61,059 nt of DNA from Octopus bimaculoides. Lineage: Eukaryota. The first letter of the stretch is position 1. Each line of letters begins with the position of its first letter. Below the pieces are notes generated by a model. The model ran no database searches and was not told the DNA's origin. It saw only the letters and a program-made list of their open reading frames with translations. Both the position numbers and the translations under genes were made by a program. This document shows, piece by piece, positions 4,462 to 58,757 of this stretch. The DNA is taken from contig NC_068986.1 of assembly GCF_001194135.2 (NCBI RefSeq), positions 46,671,752 to 46,732,810 of the forward strand, read 5' to 3'.

Positions 4462-5423
4462 NNNNNNNNNNNNNNNNNNNNNNNNNNNNNNNNNNNNNNN
4501 NNNNNNNNNNNNNNNNNNNNNNNNNNNNNNNNNNNNNNNNNNNNNNNNNNNNNNNNNNNNNNNNNNNNNNNNNNNNNNNNNNNNNNNNNNNNNNNNNNNN
4601 NNNNNNNNNNNNNNNNNNNNNNNNNNNNNNNNNNNNNNNNNNNNNNNNNNNNNNNNNNNNNNNNNNNNNNNNNNNNNNNNNNNNNNNNNNNNNNNNNNNN
4701 NNNNNNNNNNNNNNNNNNNNNNNNNNNNNNNNNNNNNNNNNNNNNNNNNNNNNNNNNNNNNNNNNNNNNNNNNNNNNNNNNNNNNNNNNNNNNNNNNNNN
4801 NNNNNNNNNNNNNNNNNNNNNNNNNNNNNNNNNNNNNNNNNNNNNNNNNNNNNNNNNNNNNNNNNNNNNNNNNNNNNNNNNNNNNNNNNNNNNNNNNNNN
4901 NNNNNNNNNNNNNNNNNNNNNNNNNNNNNNNNNNNNNNNNNNNNNNNNNNNNNNNNNNNNNNNNNNNNNNNNNNNNNNNNNNNNNNNNNNNNNNNNNNNN
5001 NNNNNNNNNNNNNNNNNNNNNNNNNNNNNNNNNNNNNNNNNNNNNNNNNNNNNNNNNNNNNNNNNNNNNNNNNNNNNNNNNNNNNNNNNNNNNNNNNNNN
5101 NNNNNNNNNNNNNNNNNNNNNNNNNNNNNNNNNNNNNNNNNNNNNNNNNNNNNNNNNNNNNNNNNNNNNNNNNNNNNNNNNNNNNNNNNNNNNNNNNNNN
5201 NNNNNNNNTATATATATATGTACTTACATACAGAAGACCAAAAGTGTACGTACGCCGCTATATGGATATATAAAAAAAGAAAACAAATATGGAACAAGAT
5301 CGTAACAGGCGACAAAACACCCGGACAGTTAGACGATACAAAAAAGCACAGGAAAAGCAATATAAATGTATACATATGTGTGTGTGTGTGTGTGCGTGCG
5401 TGTATCTGCGTGTGTGCATACAA

Positions 5424-5455
<32 letters not shown>

Positions 5456-5921
5456 ACACATACATATATACATACACACACACAGATGTTTGTTGCAACG
5501 CCAATTTGATATTTGCTCGTGAGATGCAATCATGCACACACGAAGCTCTTCGATATGGAAATCTAAAGAAAAACTAATCAGCGCGAAATACCCCAACAAC
5601 GTCTACTGTTCAAGGGCATTTCCACAATTTCAGTAACGATTTCGTGTGCCATGATTTATTTTAGACATTCGATGACACAGTCATGAAAAATGGTAACATT
5701 CACAATATCGATGATGAAACATTGTAAACACCTCTAGCAATTAAACGGGAAAATGTCAATATATATATATAAACATACAAATCCATGCATATATTCATAT
5801 ATACACGTATACATTTGTATGAATACTTACACTCTCGCACACACGCACTCGCACACACACTCATACACACATATGTATACATATACATATGTATGTATAA
5901 ATATATATATCTATATATATC

Positions 5922-25000: not shown

Positions 25001-25063
<63 letters not shown>

Positions 25064-25083
25064 NNNNNNNNNNNNNNNNNNNN

Positions 25084-25136
<53 letters not shown>

Positions 25137-30065: not shown

Positions 30066-30957
30066 AGGGTATATGATAAAGGAACCATTGCCTGACCGCT
30101 TGATTTGTTACAAATAGCAGCTAAGTCTCCCTCAAATCACACTCTAGAGCTTAAAAATTGTGAGAAACACATTGGCTAATATAGTTCTAGGTAAGAATCA
30201 CCCGAGTGAAGAGCAATTCTGATTATAGATATATTCTGTCGAAACTGACTTTAACTCAATTCGTACATGTTATTGATAAACGAAATATATTTACCCCACC
30301 CCACAAAACAACTTATAATTGATAAACCAAAAATAATCAAAATTAATTGACAGCAGCACTCCGTTATAAATGGCTGACGTTACACATATGAACGGTCAGC
30401 TATTCACCACAATTGTTTCGATTCCTAACTGTCTTTCATATTAAATTTGGATCACTAGCATGCACTCACATTACTGCACGAGACCATGGAGCGAAAATTA
30501 AATACATACTGCCTTACACACGCTTAGAAATGCACACACACGGACACTCACGCACACAAACACACATGCATATGTATATATATGTGTGTGTGTGTGTGTG
30601 TGTATGTGTGTGTCTGTGTGTGTGTGTGTGTGTGTGTATAACTTTTATACAGAAGGAAGATGAAAGAGAAGTAGAATAGATGTATAGATTTGTTGACATA
30701 TCGTCTTTGTATGATAATTCATATCGTTGCTTTTGCATATGTGCACACCAATATCAGTTGTTATATTTATGACAATCTGAGTTACTTTTGTTACTATATA
30801 TGCAAACCAATTTGACTTACTGTAAAAGACGATTTGACAGAAATATTTGGTTAGATGTTTCCTTGTGTCTTAATTTTCTATTTTGCACATGACTCTATGC
30901 TAAATGTACAAGTTTTTTCTTTGATGTGTCAGAAAAATTGAAATGGCTTTTAACGTA

Positions 30958-31007
<50 letters not shown>

Positions 31008-31042
31008 AAATATATGTGAGTATGTGTGTGTATATATGTATT

Positions 31043-31320
31043 AATAAATTATAGGGCAGCAACAAAAATTTTAGAAATTTTATTTACCACCAGTGGTCTA
31101 GCGAGAATAAAAATCAGTCAATAGGCTATATATTATTCATTTAAAATACAGAGATGCCTATAACAGGACATCTGACCCGCTAGAAAGAGCAGCAAAAGAC
31201 TACATACCACAAAAATAGGGATAATTTCGAAATTATCCTTATTTTTGTGGTATGTAGTCTTTTGTTGCTCTTTCTAGCGGGTCAGATGTCCTATTATAGG
31301 CATCTCTGTATTTTCAATGA

Positions 31321-31322
<2 letters not shown>
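31043..31322. repeat. Foldback fragment of the 466-nt hammerhead repeat family
   Basis: 94-bp arms (31135-31228 / 31229-31322, 4 mismatches) with no spacer, centred on TTCGAA; sequence matches 58558-58757. Confidence 0.92.
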
Positions 31323-31351
<29 letters not shown>

Positions 31352-31369: not shown

Positions 31370-32850
31370 CCCCATTTTTTAGGAGGAGCTCACCACAAGA
31401 CACACATCAGGGGTTCCATTCATTTCCCAGCTCAAAGAGGCGAGCCATGTTCTATACTCAGGTCAAGGCGTAGAATGCAACGCCCGATATCAGCAGCGGG
31501 GCCCGACAGCATCCGCTAGTTTACCCCCGCCGCATCATGCAACATCAATTTCACTCATCCAGCCACAAACACTCTCCAAGATTTCCTATCATTTGTAAAC
31601 TACCTTGCCTCTCTCACTCCTACACCTCTAACCACTAAAGCTTTCCTCATTTCATCCATCCACACAAACCGAGGTCTGCCTCTGGTTCTGCTGCTTACCA
31701 CTTCTGCCTTCATCATCTTCCTTACCATCCGCTCCTCATCCATTCTCTTCAGTCGACCAAATCTCATCAACATTCGTCTTTTCTGAAACAACTGACTCTC
31801 CTGTAATTTCTCTATTTTTCCCACCATTTGGGCTCTCCTACTAAAGAATCTAGCATTTACCTCTCTCACCACATCATCCATATATAAATTAAACAGCCAA
31901 GGAGACATCACATAACCATGTCTTAACCCCATACTTACATCAAACCACTTACTTCGCCATCCACCCTAACGCACGCCCTACATTCTCTATAAAAATTTTA
32001 CAACACTCAACAATCTACCTTCTACTTCATGCAATCGCAACACATGTTACACTGCATCTATGTCTACACGGTCATATACCCTCTGTAGGTCTATAAAGGT
32101 CTAATACACCTCCCTCCTTTTTGCCCAAAACTTCTCACACATTGCCTTACAACAAATATTTGATCTGCACACCCACTTCCTCTCATAAAACCGCACTGTT
32201 CCTCCCCTAGTACACTCTCTGCCTGGTTCTTTACCCATACAGTTTACCAACCACACACAACAGACTTGTACCCCTAAAATTTCCAAACTCACACTTATCC
32301 CCATCCCCCTTGCACAGTGACACTATACAGGCACTGCACCAGTCCTTTGGTACTCTTCCAGCCATATTACAACCATTCACAAGTGCCACTAACCATTCAA
32401 TCACTGTTACTCCTCCTTTCTTTAAGCATTCTACTGTACACACATCTATATCTGGCACCCTCCGATTTGCAATCTTCCACAAGGATTCCTTCACCTTCTC
32501 CCTTCCAATTGCACCATAGTTCCATTCCCCAACAACAGGCATTCTTCTCTTTCCTCCCACAGCCACCATACTTGCCTCCCTAACATCCTCCACATTTAAC
32601 AGCTCACTAAAATACTCTGCCCATCTCCTTTGTGCACCCTCACTTCCTTTCAGCAAATTTCCATTTACATCTTTCATCCTTTCTTCCCTTCTACCAACCC
32701 TCCTTGTTACAGTCTGTACCTCTTTCCAAAACATCTTTTTATTTTTTACAAAATGTTCACTCAACTTTTTCCCGAACCTTTTACTCGCCTCTAATTTCGC
32801 CACCCTCACCACTCTCTTTAATCTCCGCTCCACATCTCTTTAGCGATCAT
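31370..32850 (-). mobile_element. RTE-clade LINE, 5'-truncated and internally deleted
   Basis: ORF 32231-32833 (KKMFWKEV...RRWAEYFSELLN...VPKDWCSACIVSLCKG...NFRGTSLLCVVGKLYG), then GLRHGYVMSPWLFNLYMDDVVRE...SQLF fused to the C-terminal RGRPRFVWMD and a 3' UTR. Confidence 0.93.
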
Positions 32851-42229: not shown

Positions 42230-42273
<44 letters not shown>

Positions 42274-42274
42274 T

Positions 42275-43040
42275 ATATAAATACAGTGTACATTTAAACA
42301 CATAAGATGTATCCGTCATATGATTCCTTGTACGCTAGAATGAACAGCTAAAATCCAAACCACTATTTAGGAATAAACGTCGAAGGGAATGAAAAATAAA
42401 AACATTTACCATCTATCTCCTTTTAGCAGGTCCTTCTAGCGTGCAAGGAATCCTATGACGGATACCTCTTATGTGTTTAAATGTACACTGTATTTATATG
42501 AATAATATATAGTCTATTGACTAAATTTTTTTACACGCTAGGCCATTGGTAGTAGAAATTTCTAATATTTCTTATCTTGATATTATTAATTATTGATAAT
42601 TTTTTCAGGAAAATTTTCGATTGAAAAAGCCGGCATTTTTATTTACTACCGACAAGGAGCTGTGCTTGCGCGGTAGATTTGAAAAATTAGAACGTTAAAA
42701 TTAGAATGTTAAAAATTAGAATGAAAAATTAGAATTAGAAGCACGGGGCATATGCTGGATTGCCTCGTACTTATATGTTTAATCTAGGTGTACCTGCAGA
42801 CGAAGACATCGTCTGACAAATTATTTTACTTGCTAAAAAATGTCTGAAACCATGGTCCAGGAGATAAATGGTAAATGTTTTTATTTTTCATTTCCTTCGA
42901 AGTTTATCCCTAAATAGTGGTCTGGATTTTAGGTGTTCCTTCTAGCCTGCAAGGAATCCCATGACGGATACCTCTTATGTGTTTAAACGTACAGTGTATT
43001 TACATGAATAATATAGTCTATTGACTAAATTTTTTTACAC
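42275..43040 (+). mobile_element. Hammerhead-bearing repeat (retrozyme-like): ~506-nt period plus 5' inverted arm
   Basis: Direct repeat 42421-42535 ~ 42927-43037; inverted arm 42275-42421; related to 58116-58757; internal (AAAATTAGAA..)x4 expansion at 42682-42738. Confidence 0.82.
42793..42861 (+). ncRNA. Type I hammerhead ribozyme with one core substitution (U4A)
   Basis: CCTG-CAGACGA-AGACA...TGTCT-GAAA-C-CATG-GTC-CAGG. Confidence 0.78.
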
Positions 43041-43108
43041 ACATATATATGTATATGTATGTATGCATGTATGTATGTATGTATGTATGTATGTATGTAT
43101 GTATCTAT

Positions 43109-43140
<32 letters not shown>

Positions 43141-43151
43141 ACACATACACC

Positions 43152-43760
43152 CACACCATCCTACTCTTACCTTTCTCGAGATCTCATTTTCCATCTTTCG
43201 CCTCATAGTCAATTCTTGACTGAGATACACATAGCTGCTCACCTCTTCAATTTCATCGCCGACTGTTAGGTGATCGATCGGTACACCTTCAGACCGTATG
43301 AAATTGGTTTTCGGTGAAAGGTGTTCTAAATGCGAACCTAGACAAGGCAACTCGCGACAATCTCTTCAACAGCACAGTCTCGCTTCTAATATTATACGCA
43401 TGTGAGACTTGGCCCTTGATGAAGAGAGAACAGCATCTACTGACGGCGCAGAGAGCCATGGAAAGGTCGATTTTGGGAATCTGGCTAAGAGATTACATCT
43501 GGAACAAGGAGATCATGGATAGAACTGGAGTGAAGGACCTCGTCACAGAATACCATCAGGCAAAGCTACGATGAGCCGGTCATGTCACAAACTTCACAGA
43601 CAATCAGTGGATGCATGCAGTTATCGTGTGGTGCCCGCGCGAACGGAAGAAACCACTCGGAAGACTTCCAATGAGGTAGGAAGATGATTTAAGAAAGATG
43701 TTTGGAACAACGTGGAAGGGAGATAACACGAGGGGAATGGAGGGAATGTTGTGGCCAGCG
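43152..43760 (+). mobile_element. RTE-1-like LINE 3' end with inverted 5' segment
   Basis: 43152-43315 minus encodes PKTNFIRSEG...SYVYLSQELTMRRKMENEISRKVRVGW; 43316-43760 plus encodes the continuation KGVLNANLDKATRDNLFNSTV...LYACETW...AGHV..FTDNQW...PLGRLPMR. Confidence 0.9.
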
Positions 43761-56893: not shown

Positions 56894-57390
56894 GATGTAT
56901 GTATGTATGTATGTGTGTATGTGTGTATGTATGTAAGTATGTATATGCGCGTGTGAATGTATAAATAATATGGGTGGCTAATTCGCAATTTTACAACCTA
57001 AAGGTAGAAGTATATACGTCAATAGAGTGACAAAGGACACTAATCAGCACCAGTATTGCTAGAAATAAAAGCCAAAACAACTCAGCAGCCACAGAAACAC
57101 TATCTTAATGTCTGACAAAGGAGGCAATATATCTACGGCTGCAGATATAGCCAGATCATCGATGATTTTGTATGTTGATACTAACGCATCTCAATACTCA
57201 TCTTAATGACTGACAAGGGAGGCAAGGTCCCTAGTGATAGTTTATTAATATTTGAAATGCCAGTAAACAAGTAAGCTGTCTAGCGTATAACAGAATTTCG
57301 TCGTTTTTATTTAATTAATTTTATAATTGATTATTCTTTGACCATTGAGATTAGACATGGAAGTAGTGGTATGTCTGCCATAATTATATA
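56508..57390 (+). repeat. ~140-bp direct repeat Y (56508-56650 and 57248-57390)
   Basis: ATATTTGAAATGCCAGTAAACAAGT...ATAATTGATTATT...ATAATTATATATA occurs twice, each copy ending in (TA)n. Confidence 0.85.
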
Positions 57391-57830
57391 TATATATATC
57401 TTAATGACTGGCAAAGGAGGCAATCTCTCCACGGCCGCAGATACAGCCAGATCATCGATGATTTCGCATTTTGATGCTCACGCATCTTAATGCTCATCAG
57501 TGGCTCGCACCGCACCTTGGGTTAAACTCAGCTCACCTTGTCAGCTTATAAGATTTCCCTTGAAATTACACGCTGATTGCATAAACGGTTAAAGTGAAAA
57601 TTATAAATGATATGGGTGGTTAATTCACAATTCTACATTAAGATGCATTAGCATCAAAATGCGAAATCATCGATTTAACTATATCTGCGGCCGTGAGGCG
57701 TTTTGCCTCCCTTGTCAGTCACTAAGATAGTGCTTTTGTGGCTATTGAGTTGTTTTAACTCTTATTTCTAGCAATACTGGTACTTATTAGTGCCCTTTGT
57801 CACTTTAGTGATGTATATATTTCTGGCATT
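56960..57830 (-). mobile_element. Rearranged cluster of a ~346-nt hammerhead-bearing repeat (retrozyme-like family H1)
   Basis: Copies at 56960-57203 (decayed HHR), 57399-57637 (intact HHR) and an inverted partial copy at 57636-57830. Confidence 0.82.
57445..57505 (-). ncRNA. Intact type I hammerhead ribozyme
   Basis: AGCCA-CTGATGA-GCAT taag ATGC gtga GCAT caaa ATGC-GAAA-TCATCGATGA-TC-TGGCT; all core residues present; predicted AUC cleavage between 57450 and 57449. Confidence 0.9.
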
Positions 57831-58115
57831 TTATATATANNNNNNNNNNNNNNNNNNNNNNNNNNNNNNNNNNNNNNNNNNNNNNNNNNNNNNNNNNNNN
57901 NNNNNNNNNNNNNNNNNNNNNNNNNNNNNNNNNNNNNNNNNNNNNNNNNNNNNNNNNNNNNNNNNNNNNNNNNNNNNNNNNNNNNNNNNNNNNNNNNNNN
58001 NNNNNNNNNNNNNNNNNNNNNNNNNNNNNNNNNNNNNNNNNNNNNNNNNNNNNNNNNNNNNNNNNNNNNNNNNNNNNNNNNNNNNNNNNNNNNNNNNNNN
58101 NNNNNNNNNNNNNNN

Positions 58116-58757
58116 GTATAGAGTTTTTTGCTGCTCTTTCTAGCGGGTTAGATGTCTTATTATAGGCATCTCTATATTTTAAATGAATAATATATATGTA
58201 GTCTATTGAGTAATTTTTTATTCTCGCTGGACCACTGGTGGTAAATTAAATTTCTAAAATTTCTTTTCCTTCCCTATGATTAATAATGATATTATATTTT
58301 TTGGCTAATTTCTGAAAGAAAATCGGCATTTATTTTACATTTACTGCCGATTAGTTAATGCGCACATGCGTGGTTAAGTCTTGAGAAATTAAGCATGTAA
58401 ACTGGAGTCAGGTTCTTTCCTTGGCTCGTGTTTACACGCTAATCCGGCACTCTGCTGACGAAAGCGCCCGAGTTAGATATACTTTTATCTTACTAAATAG
58501 CTTGAAACCATGGTACAGAGTATAGACTGGTAAAAATGTTTTTATTTTTCATTCTCCTTCGAAATTATCCCTATTTTTGTGGTATAGAGTTTTTTGCTGC
58601 TCTTTCTAGCGGGTTAGATGTCCTATTATAGGCAACTCTATATTTTAAATGAATAATATATATGTAGTCTATTGACAAATTTTTTATTCTCGCTGGACCA
58701 CTGGTGGTAAATTAAATTTCTAAAATTTCTTTTGCTGCCCTATGATTAATAATGATA
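58116..58757 (+). mobile_element. 466-nt tandem hammerhead-bearing repeat (retrozyme-like family H2), about 1.4 units visible between gaps
   Basis: 58116-58290 repeated at 58582-58757 with near identity; begins at an N gap, ends in (TA)n. Confidence 0.85.
58449..58521 (+). ncRNA. Intact type I hammerhead ribozyme
   Basis: ACTCTG-CTGACGA-AAGC...GCTT-GAAA-C-CATG-GTA-CAGAGT; 6-bp stem I; predicted GUA cleavage after 58515. Confidence 0.88.

What the first reader, a model, noticed from the sequence alone, without database searches (positions are those of the whole stretch)
42275..43040. Diverged H2 subfamily: compensatory stem changes and an inverted arm ending at the cleavage site
Relative to the 58 kb ribozyme, stem I changes ACTCTG/CAGAGT to CCTG/CAGG, stem II changes AAGC/GCTT to AGACA/TGTCT, and the triplet changes GUA to GUC, while GAAACCATGGT is kept. 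Covariation like this indicates selection on the HHR fold. This copy has U4A (CAGACGA) and is probably inactive. The inverted arm (42275-42421) reads AGGAGATAGATGGTAAATG..., starting within 1-2 nt of the predicted cut (GTC|CAGGAGATAAATGGTAAATG). Inference: reverse transcription ran to the 5' end of a self-cleaved RNA and switched template, the inverted-terminus layout known from Penelope insertions. That would be genomic evidence that the ribozyme cut in vivo.
Basis: partly seen in the sequence, partly recalled or inferred. Interest (0 to 1): 0.85.

Follow-up and report, generated by a model that had tools for sequence, protein, structure and literature searches.

The report
Dead hammerhead retroelement with inverted arm
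This is an old, decayed insertion of a small non-coding, hammerhead-ribozyme-carrying retroelement of the Penelope-dependent kind; its inverted arm does stop 1-2 bases from the ribozyme's predicted cut, which hints at, but does not prove, reverse transcription of a self-cleaved RNA.

Summary
Every sequence statement in the finding checks out. There is a type-I hammerhead motif at 42793-42861, with core CAGACGA (U4A) and a predicted cut after C42857. It differs from the 58.5 kb copy by 3-4 compensatory stem changes. A 147-nt inverted arm (42275-42421) has its inner end at position +2/+3 after the cut.

The arm abuts a 5'-truncated direct copy, so the locus reads rc(a+b) | b+c | x | HHR | a+b+c. 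That is one inverted arm plus a 1.36-unit partial tandem of a 504-nt non-coding unit, sitting between microsatellites.

This inverted-plus-partial-tandem layout, including a 35-nt "tail", is the known signature of Penelope-like elements and animal non-LTR retrozymes. The three copies of segment b are equally diverged, about 5% each. That points to a single old insertion event, and it means U4A may have arisen after insertion.

The inference that the ribozyme cut in vivo rests on one junction. Chance would place a junction that close about 1% of the time, or about 3% for the three junctions in this window. At least four other cut sites in the window were read through by a cDNA. The family-wide test could not be run because no further copies were retrievable.

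Verdict: a new member of a known kind. The run-off idea is plausible (about 0.45) but unproven.

The parts
42233..42274 (.). (TA)n microsatellite, left target flank
   Evidence: TRF reports period 2, 25.5 copies. No target-site duplication can be discerned.
42275..42421 (-). Inverted arm, the reverse complement of unit segments a+b (unit positions 2-148 counted from the cut)
   Evidence: 90% complementary to 42859-43005; nhmmer hmm 2-148. The outer end lies in the TA-rich patch TATTTATAT. The inner end is AGGAG..., which is +2 after the cut.
42421..42536 (+). 5'-truncated direct copy (segments b+c), starting at unit position about +70 and abutting the inverted arm head to head
   Evidence: 91% identical to 42927-43040. 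No target DNA lies between the arms, and there is a 1-nt overlap (T42421).
42537..42792 (+). Segment x, the rest of the unit upstream of the ribozyme. It includes an H2-specific 14-nt tandem at 42682-42735.
   Evidence: Homologous to 58291-58448; TRF.
42793..42861 (+). Type-I hammerhead motif with U4A (A42798). Helix I is 4 bp and helix II is 5 bp closing a 32-nt loop. Helix III lies within the ACCATGGT palindrome. The predicted cut is after C42857.
   Evidence: Descriptor scan; shuffles; pair counts; folding.
42797..42815 (+). Competing 7-bp hairpin CAGACGA/TCGTCTG that sequesters the catalytic core. The U4A change completes it.
   Evidence: It dominates the MFE fold at -13.1 kcal/mol, against -4.4 for the hammerhead fold.
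42858..43040 (+). Second direct copy (segments a+b+c). Its 3' end lies 35 nt beyond the point where the inverted arm starts, giving a tail-like asymmetry.
43041..43140 (.). (CA)(TA)n(TATG)n(TATC)n microsatellite, right flank
58116..58757 (+). H1 relative: a partial tandem (b c d | x | HHR 58449-58521, cut after A58515 | a b c d) with a 468-nt unit. Its left end is lost in an N gap.
   Evidence: The left and right copies are 96.5% identical. The predicted dimer is a textbook double hammerhead.
31042..31330 (-). H1-like relative without a ribozyme. It is a near-perfect palindrome: long arm 31042-31228 (minus strand) and short arm 31229-31330 (plus strand). The centre lies in TTC|GAA, about +45 from the cut-site equivalent.
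   Evidence: The arms are 96% identical.

Best explanation
What it is. 42275-43040 is a single, old, now dead insertion of a roughly 500-nt non-coding retroelement. Each unit of that element carries a type-I hammerhead whose helix III works through dimerisation. The element is of the kind mobilised by Penelope-like-element (PLE) reverse transcriptase/endonuclease, that is, an animal 'non-LTR retrozyme' or a derivative of a PLE pseudo-LTR (pLTR, the PLE flanking repeat).

How it most likely formed (inferred):
- A (TA)n microsatellite was cut on both strands, and each 3' end primed reverse transcription.
- On the bottom strand, the cDNA copied a multimeric or circular RNA from the 3' end at 43040. 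It passed through an uncut or religated ribozyme site and reached unit position +70.
- On the top strand, the (TA)n end annealed to the TA-rich patch at the end of segment b and copied 147 nt.
- That second cDNA stopped at +2 of the ribozyme cut. The most economical reason is that its template was a self-cleaved linear monomer and the enzyme ran off the 5'-OH end.
- It then jumped onto the 3' end of the other cDNA. This explains why one side of the junction sits at a defined site and the other at an arbitrary one.

What is shown: the anatomy, the homology, the ribozyme-type fold with compensatory changes, and the single-event age pattern.

What is inferred: priming on both strands, run-off at a cleaved end, and the template jump.

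My confidence is about 0.85 for the identity and layout, and about 0.45 for the run-off step.
For: - Layout. The locus reads rc(a+b)|b+c|x|HHR|a+b+c, with head-to-head abutment and no target DNA between the arms.
- Single event. The three copies of b carry 6, 4 and 2 private changes in 79 nt, a star-like pattern expected from one event.
- Non-coding. No ORF of at least 30 aa starts within the element, and the longest stop-to-stop frame is 38 aa.
- Ribozyme. The hammerhead motif is non-random and is kept by changes on both sides of 4 pairs. The H1 dimer MFE is the double hammerhead with an 8-bp ACCAUGGU helix III, at -46.4 against -33.0 kcal/mol for two monomers.
- Flanks. Microsatellites flank all copies.
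- Published PLE features match. These are partial tandems plus an adjacent inverted 5'-truncated copy, a 30-40 bp tail at one end and (TA)n targets (PMC8557442). A purified PLE protein cleaves and extends both strands and uses two RT start sites (PMC11167929). Metazoan type-I hammerheads have a 1-2 bp helix III with a palindromic loop and act as dimers (PMC4209133).
- In vivo precedent. Retrozyme hammerheads self-cleave, and their RNAs accumulate as circRNAs in animals (PMC7229834).
- The junction. It sits at +2/+3 of the cut, with a chance expectation of about 1%.
Against: - There is only one junction, and no further family copies could be retrieved.
- In this window at least four cut sites were read through by a cDNA: 42857, 58515, 57450 and the family-B inverted arm.
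- For a PLE studied in vitro, ribozyme cleavage was not needed for insertion, and no RNA-seq reads ended at the cut (PMC11167929).
- The only ribozyme copy at this locus has U4A, A10.1-U11.1 instead of G-C, and a weak predicted hammerhead fold.
- No Rfam hammerhead model matches it.
- No PLE RT or GIY-YIG ORF lies in the window.
- The first base after the cut (C42858) is missing from the arm.
Confidence: 0.5

Rival explanations
1. Same element and same two-strand insertion, but the junction position is a coincidence. The converging cDNAs stop wherever synthesis or repair ends and are joined there, so the locus says nothing about ribozyme cleavage.
For: - Other junctions in the window lie elsewhere. 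The 31 kb relative is at about +45, inside a TTCGAA palindrome. The family-B inverted arm ends about 45 nt upstream of its cut.
- Most cut sites were read through.
Against: The prior chance of a junction within +/-2 nt of one specific site in a 504-nt unit is about 1%, or about 3% over three junctions. The other side of the same junction is at an arbitrary position, as expected if only one cDNA met a defined end.
Confidence: 0.38
2. The cDNA stopped because the folded ribozyme, or its helix III dimer with bound protein, blocked the reverse transcriptase at the three-way junction. There was no cleaved RNA end.
For: The 8-bp ACCAUGGU duplex and helices I and II form a compact junction exactly there. 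PLE hammerhead activity is protein-assisted.
Against: A block would be expected before helix I, at +5 to +7 or further downstream. Instead the arm contains helix I residues 1.2-1.6. Other cDNAs passed the same structure.
Confidence: 0.08
3. The layout comes from DNA-level rearrangement after insertion, such as a fold-back duplication or a palindrome with an asymmetric central deletion. Alternatively it is a mis-assembly of a draft scaffold.
For: - The scaffold is a draft with 4025 N.
- PLE structures are known to confuse short-read assemblies.
- An original perfect palindrome centred on the cut that then lost 68 nt from one arm would give the same picture.
Against: - The three copies differ from each other by 8-10%, so they are not collapsed or duplicated reads.
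- The palindrome-with-deletion variant still needs an arm ending at the cut.
- The same layout recurs at three loci.
Confidence: 0.04

Closest known systems
Animal non-LTR retrozymes (Cervera & de la Pena 2020, PMC7229834; Li et al. 2026 bioRxiv 10.64898/2026.07.22.740005)
   Same: Non-coding, AT-rich units arranged head to tail, each with a type-I hammerhead whose short palindromic helix III favours dimers. They are proposed to depend on Penelope-like elements.
   Different: The units here are 468-504 nt, against about 300 nt for typical retrozymes. Only 1.3-1.4 units are present per locus, not long arrays. Helix II carries a 32-34-nt insertion, and pair 10.1-11.1 is A-U. Neither circRNA nor cleavage has been tested. 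The host is probably a cephalopod, for which I found no report.
Penelope-like element insertions: pLTR partial tandems with an adjacent inverted 5'-truncated copy and a tail (Craig et al. 2021, PMC8557442; Frangieh et al. 2024, PMC11167929)
   Same: Partial tandem, inverted 5'-truncated copy abutting the upstream copy, a 35-nt length difference between the two outer ends, microsatellite/(TA)n target, and a hammerhead inside the repeat.
   Different: There is no RT/GIY-YIG ORF between the repeats or anywhere in the window. The outer ends lie in TA-rich patches that could anneal to the (TA)n target, whereas PAc (the Anolis PLE studied in PMC11167929) initiates at a site not homologous to the target.
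L1 twin priming inversions (Ostertag & Kazazian 2001; from my own knowledge)
   Same: An inverted 5' segment joined head to head to a direct 3' segment. This is explained by priming from both target strands with microhomology at the internal priming site.
   Different: Different enzyme class. Here the direct arm overlaps the inverted arm in sequence (segment b is present in both), so two RNA molecules or a multimer are needed.
R2 HDV-like ribozyme that defines the 5' end of the RNA template (Eickbush & Eickbush 2010, cited in PMC4209133; details from my own knowledge)
   Same: A self-cleaving ribozyme sets the 5' end of a retrotransposon template and so shapes the 5' junction of new copies.
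   Different: Different ribozyme and element class. In R2 this is the rule for every copy, whereas here it is at most a minority outcome.

Membership tests
Hammerhead ribozyme, type I | Conserved core C3 U4 G5 A6 N7 G8 A9 ... G12 A13 A14 | tested here: not met
   The H2 copy reads CAGACGA, with A42798 at position 4. The rest of the core is intact. The H1 relative (58455-58461 CTGACGA, GAAA 58504-07) meets it.
Hammerhead ribozyme, type I | Three helices around the core, open helix I, and cleavage triplet N-U-H followed by the helix I 3' strand | tested here: met
   Helix I is 4 bp, helix II 5 bp, and helix III is A-U, C-G, C-G within the ACCATGGT palindrome, with GUC|CAGG. 92.9% of pair cells are standard, against at most 35% in slid controls.
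Hammerhead ribozyme, type I | G10.1-C11.1 pair closing helix II (near-universal; from my own knowledge) | tested here: not met
   Both H1 and H2 have A10.1-U11.1.
Hammerhead ribozyme, type I | Match to curated covariance models (Rfam clan CL00010) | tested here: not met
   No hammerhead hit at gathering score or at E<=10 on 161-nt stretches. The neighbouring family-B motif does hit HH9 (22.5 bits, E=0.0012). The miss is therefore specific to this family, probably because of the long helix II insertion.
Hammerhead ribozyme, type I | Self-cleavage | not testable with these tools
   Folding only. The H1 dimer folds as a double hammerhead. H2 prefers a competing hairpin.
Animal non-LTR retrozyme / PLE-dependent non-autonomous element | Non-coding unit with one hammerhead, repeated head to tail | tested here: met
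   Units are 504 and 468 nt, with 1.36 and at least 1.37 units present. No ORF of at least 30 aa starts within the H2 element; the few in H1 are 31-35 aa and are not conserved in H2.
Animal non-LTR retrozyme / PLE-dependent non-autonomous element | Inverted 5'-truncated copy abutting the upstream copy | tested here: met
   42275-42421 abuts 42421-42536. Analogous structures occur at 31 kb and 57.6 kb.
Animal non-LTR retrozyme / PLE-dependent non-autonomous element | 30-40 bp tail at one end only | tested here: inconclusive
   The outer end of the inverted arm corresponds to 43005, while the direct arm ends at 43040, a 35-nt difference. At 31 kb the difference is about 100 nt. There are too few copies to judge.
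Animal non-LTR retrozyme / PLE-dependent non-autonomous element | Insertion into AT-rich or (TA)n targets | tested here: met
   (TA)n or compound microsatellites flank every end that can be seen.
Animal non-LTR retrozyme / PLE-dependent non-autonomous element | Autonomous PLE (telomerase-like RT plus GIY-YIG) in the same genome with a related pLTR | not testable with these tools
   None in the window. Pfam gives only a weak RVT_1 hit on a LINE-like fragment.
Animal non-LTR retrozyme / PLE-dependent non-autonomous element | Expression as self-cleaved linear and circular RNA | not testable with these tools
   No RNA data are available.

The most novel reading that the evidence does not exclude
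In Penelope-type insertions, the inner ends of inverted arms preferentially mark the 5'-OH ends of hammerhead-cleaved RNAs. If so, genomes carry a fossil record of ribozyme cleavage in vivo. It would also mean that cleaved linear monomers, not only multimers or circles, serve as templates. The run-off followed by a jump onto the opposite cDNA would then be the step that creates the unexplained inverted termini of these elements.
Probability: 0.3. Interest if true: 0.6.

Novelty: new member of a known kind. Interest (0 to 1): 0.35.

Why it matters
The role of hammerheads in Penelope-like elements is unsettled. Cleavage was not needed for insertion in vitro, and no RNA-seq reads ended at the cut (PMC11167929). 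The origin of the inverted termini is also unexplained. If junctions cluster at the cut site across a family, ordinary genome sequence would show that the ribozyme acts in vivo during retrotransposition, and it would give a concrete mechanism for the inverted arms. A single locus cannot show this. As it stands, the finding is a well-preserved example of a known element type, probably from a cephalopod, a group in which such elements have not been described.

Tried and rejected
1. Rfam. No hammerhead hit for H1 or H2 at gathering score or at E<=10. The whole-window E-value search returned only spurious miRNA hits on microsatellites and on the 31 kb palindrome.
2. More family copies by DNA pattern. 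It gave 120 chance hits, none with homology beyond the seed. Two viral-contig scans gave 29 unrelated hits and 0 hits. Two scans of prokaryotic genomes gave 0 hits and one chance hit in a Bacteroidales coding region.
3. Protein route to the host genome. An exact look-up of a 31-aa element ORF found nothing. The neighbouring LINE-like ORF found at best 67% identity to an Octopus bimaculoides protein, and that protein is not on record with DNA. The low identity and the lack of close hits show that the collection holds little of this genome. I therefore did not spend a second large search on element pseudo-peptides.
4. nhmmer with both units found no further copies in the window.
5. Independent insertions as the origin of the two arms. 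I rejected this because the arms abut without target DNA between them and show a star-like divergence pattern.
6. Mis-assembly. I rejected this because the copies differ by 8-10%.
7. A tRNA-derived SINE reading of the left flank. ARAGORN found no tRNA in the window.

Full report
**Context**

The window is a eukaryotic draft scaffold. It has about 34% G+C, 4025 N in gaps, and is dense in microsatellites. The neighbouring ORFs are decayed retrotransposon fragments. Pfam gives only a weak RVT_1 hit at 31600-31932. The LINE-like ORF at 32231-32833 is at best 67% identical to an Octopus bimaculoides protein. A cephalopod is therefore likely but not shown.

**Checking the observation**

- The 42.8 kb motif reads CCTG CAGACGA AGACA [32 nt] TGTCT GAAA CCATGG T C42857 | CAGG (42793-42861).
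- The 58.5 kb motif reads ACTCTG CTGACGA AAGC [34 nt] GCTT GAAA CCATGG T A58515 | CAGAGT (58449-58521).

The two regions align without gaps. On the hammerhead structure, 92.9% of pair cells are standard pairs, against 18-35% when the 3' partners are slid. Four pairs change on both sides, two each in helices I and II. With only two sequences this is suggestive rather than statistical. It is still what selection on the fold predicts.

A simple descriptor finds three such motifs in the window. It requires helix I of at least 4 bp, the core, helix II of at least 4 bp, GAAA, a short helix III and U-H. Dinucleotide shuffles give 0.015-0.03 per window.

The inverted arm 42275-42421 is 90% complementary to 42859-43005. 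In unit coordinates counted from the cut it spans 2-148. Its last base, T42421, is shared with the next segment, so it ends at +2 or +3.

Immediately after the arm comes a direct copy (42421-42536) of 42927-43040, at 91% identity. The locus is therefore rc(a+b) | b+c | x | HHR | a+b+c. That is an inverted arm joined head to head to a 5'-truncated, 1.36-unit partial tandem of a 504-nt unit.

The element lies between (TA)n on the left and a compound (TA)/(TATG)/(TATC) microsatellite on the right. No ORF of at least 30 aa starts within it.

The three copies of segment b carry 6, 4 and 2 private substitutions in 79 aligned bases. This star-like pattern fits one insertion event followed by about 5% decay per copy. 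With 13 or so core positions, one core hit such as U4A is roughly an even-odds outcome of that decay. U4A therefore says little about the source element.

**Relatives in the window**

- The 58 kb locus has the same partial-tandem layout with a 468-nt unit. Its left and right copies are 96.5% identical, and its left end is lost in a gap.
- The 31 kb locus is a near-perfect palindrome with arms 96% identical. The centre lies in TTC|GAA, about +45 from the cut-site equivalent. One arm reaches the same 3' end as the 58 kb copy.
- The short, inverted arms at 42 kb and 31 kb both begin in the same TA-rich patch (TATTTATATGAATAATATAT) next to (TA)n. This suggests that the microsatellite 3' end primed there by annealing (inference).
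- A third, unrelated hammerhead family lies on the minus strand at 57445-57505: AGCCA CUGAUGA ... GAAA UCAUCGAUGA UC|UGGCU. It weakly matches Rfam HH9 (22.5 bits, E=0.0012). It sits in its own inverted-plus-direct complex at 56960-57842.

**Is it a functional hammerhead?**

H1 looks competent on paper. Its dimer MFE is the classical double hammerhead with an 8-bp ACCAUGGU helix III, at -46.4 against 2 x -16.5 kcal/mol. This matches the description of metazoan type-I hammerheads, which have a 1-2 bp helix III with a palindromic loop and are active as dimers (PMC4209133).

H2 as found does not look competent.
- It has U4A.
- Its hammerhead fold is worth only -4.4 kcal/mol.
- Its MFE (-13.1) is a 7-bp hairpin, CAGACGA/UCGUCUG, that buries the core.

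Both copies have A10.1-U11.1 rather than G-C, and neither matches any Rfam hammerhead model. Activity is untested.

**What kind of element**

The layout matches published Penelope-like-element insertions.
[quoted passage not shown] There is a 30-40 bp tail at one end, and (TA)n is a preferred target (PMC8557442).
- Here the outer end of the inverted arm and the 3' end of the direct arm differ by 35 nt.
- A purified PLE protein cleaves and extends both DNA strands and starts reverse transcription at two sites whose spacing equals the tail (PMC11167929).
- Non-coding tandem units with type-I hammerheads are the animal non-LTR retrozymes (PMC7229834). These were recently argued to be PLE-dependent (bioRxiv 10.64898/2026.07.22.740005).

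I file the element there, with the caveat that no PLE ORF is in the window.

**Mechanism and the cut-site claim**

The head-to-head abutment is best explained by two cDNAs converging from the two target strands.
- The direct-arm cDNA read through a cut site (42857), so its template was an uncleaved multimer or a religated circle. It had reached +70.
- The inverted-arm cDNA copied 147 nt and ended at +2.
- If that template was a self-cleaved monomer, the enzyme ran off the 5' end and continued on the 3' end of the other cDNA. This accounts for one defined and one arbitrary side of the junction.

A stall at the folded ribozyme is less likely, because the arm includes helix I residues 1.2-1.6.

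The chance of a junction within +/-2 nt of the cut is about 1% per junction, or about 3% for the three in the window. Against this:
- The 31 kb junction stops before the cut, so it is uninformative.
- The family-B inverted arm runs through its cut and ends in helix II, about 45 nt upstream.
- All direct arms read through their cut sites.
- So one of at least five cut sites met by a cDNA shows a stop.
- In vitro, PLE insertion did not need ribozyme cleavage, and no RNA-seq reads ended at the cut.

The decisive family-wide breakpoint map could not be made. DNA pattern scans and protein look-ups returned no further copies.

**Verdict**

The identification as a hammerhead-bearing, Penelope-type complex insertion is well supported (about 0.85). 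The reading that this is genomic evidence of in vivo cleavage is plausible (about 0.45) but rests on one junction. In vivo cleavage of retrozyme hammerheads is already known from circRNA work, which limits the surprise. What would be new is using cut-site junctions as a genomic read-out of cleavage, and using them to explain the inverted termini.

Noticed in passing
window 57445-57505 (minus strand), complex 56960-57842: A third, unrelated type-I hammerhead: AGCCA CUGAUGA GCAUU...AUGC GAAA UCAUCGAUGA UC|UGGCU, with the cut between 57450 and 57449. It has a 10-nt palindromic helix III and a weak Rfam HH9 hit (22.5 bits). It sits in its own inverted-plus-direct arrangement, with a second, degenerate ribozyme copy near 57150-57200. 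Its inverted arm (57636-57824, plus strand) runs through the cut site.
   Followed up: partly
window 31042-31330: A near-perfect palindrome (arms 96% identical, no spacer) made from an H1-like copy, centred on the element's own TTCGAA hexamer. It produces a spurious mir-2513 hit of 78.9 bits on both strands. Two converging cDNAs annealing through the 6-nt palindrome would explain it.
   Followed up: partly
window 42797-42815: A perfect 7-bp hairpin, CAGACGA-agaca-TCGTCTG, that includes the U4A base. With U at position 4 the stem would carry a U-U mismatch. It could be chance decay or an alternative 'off' conformer of this lineage.
   Followed up: partly
window 57843-58115 (N gap) between family B and the H1 copy: Two different hammerhead-bearing elements lie back to back across a 273-nt gap, with (TA)n at its edge. 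This looks like repeated insertion into one microsatellite hot spot. The gap may hide the 5' structure of the H1 copy, including any inverted arm.
   Followed up: no
window 42682-42735: A 14-nt tandem (AAAAATTAGAATGTT, 3.8 copies) inside segment x of H2. It is absent from H1 and accounts for most of the difference in unit length (504 against 468 nt).
   Followed up: no
whole window, e.g. 25015-25126, 5373-5463, 30534-30613: At E<=10, Rfam returns 253 hits. All of the 150 listed are microRNA or snoRNA models matching microsatellites, mainly (CA)n/(TG)n and (TATG)n. They are artefacts, not genes.
   Followed up: yes
window 31600-32833 (minus strand) and 43129-43574: Decayed LINE-like reverse-transcriptase fragments flank two of the hammerhead-element loci. 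The best database identity is 67%, to an Octopus bimaculoides protein, and the other hits are 42-54% identical, from marine metagenomes and a mantis shrimp.
   Followed up: partly
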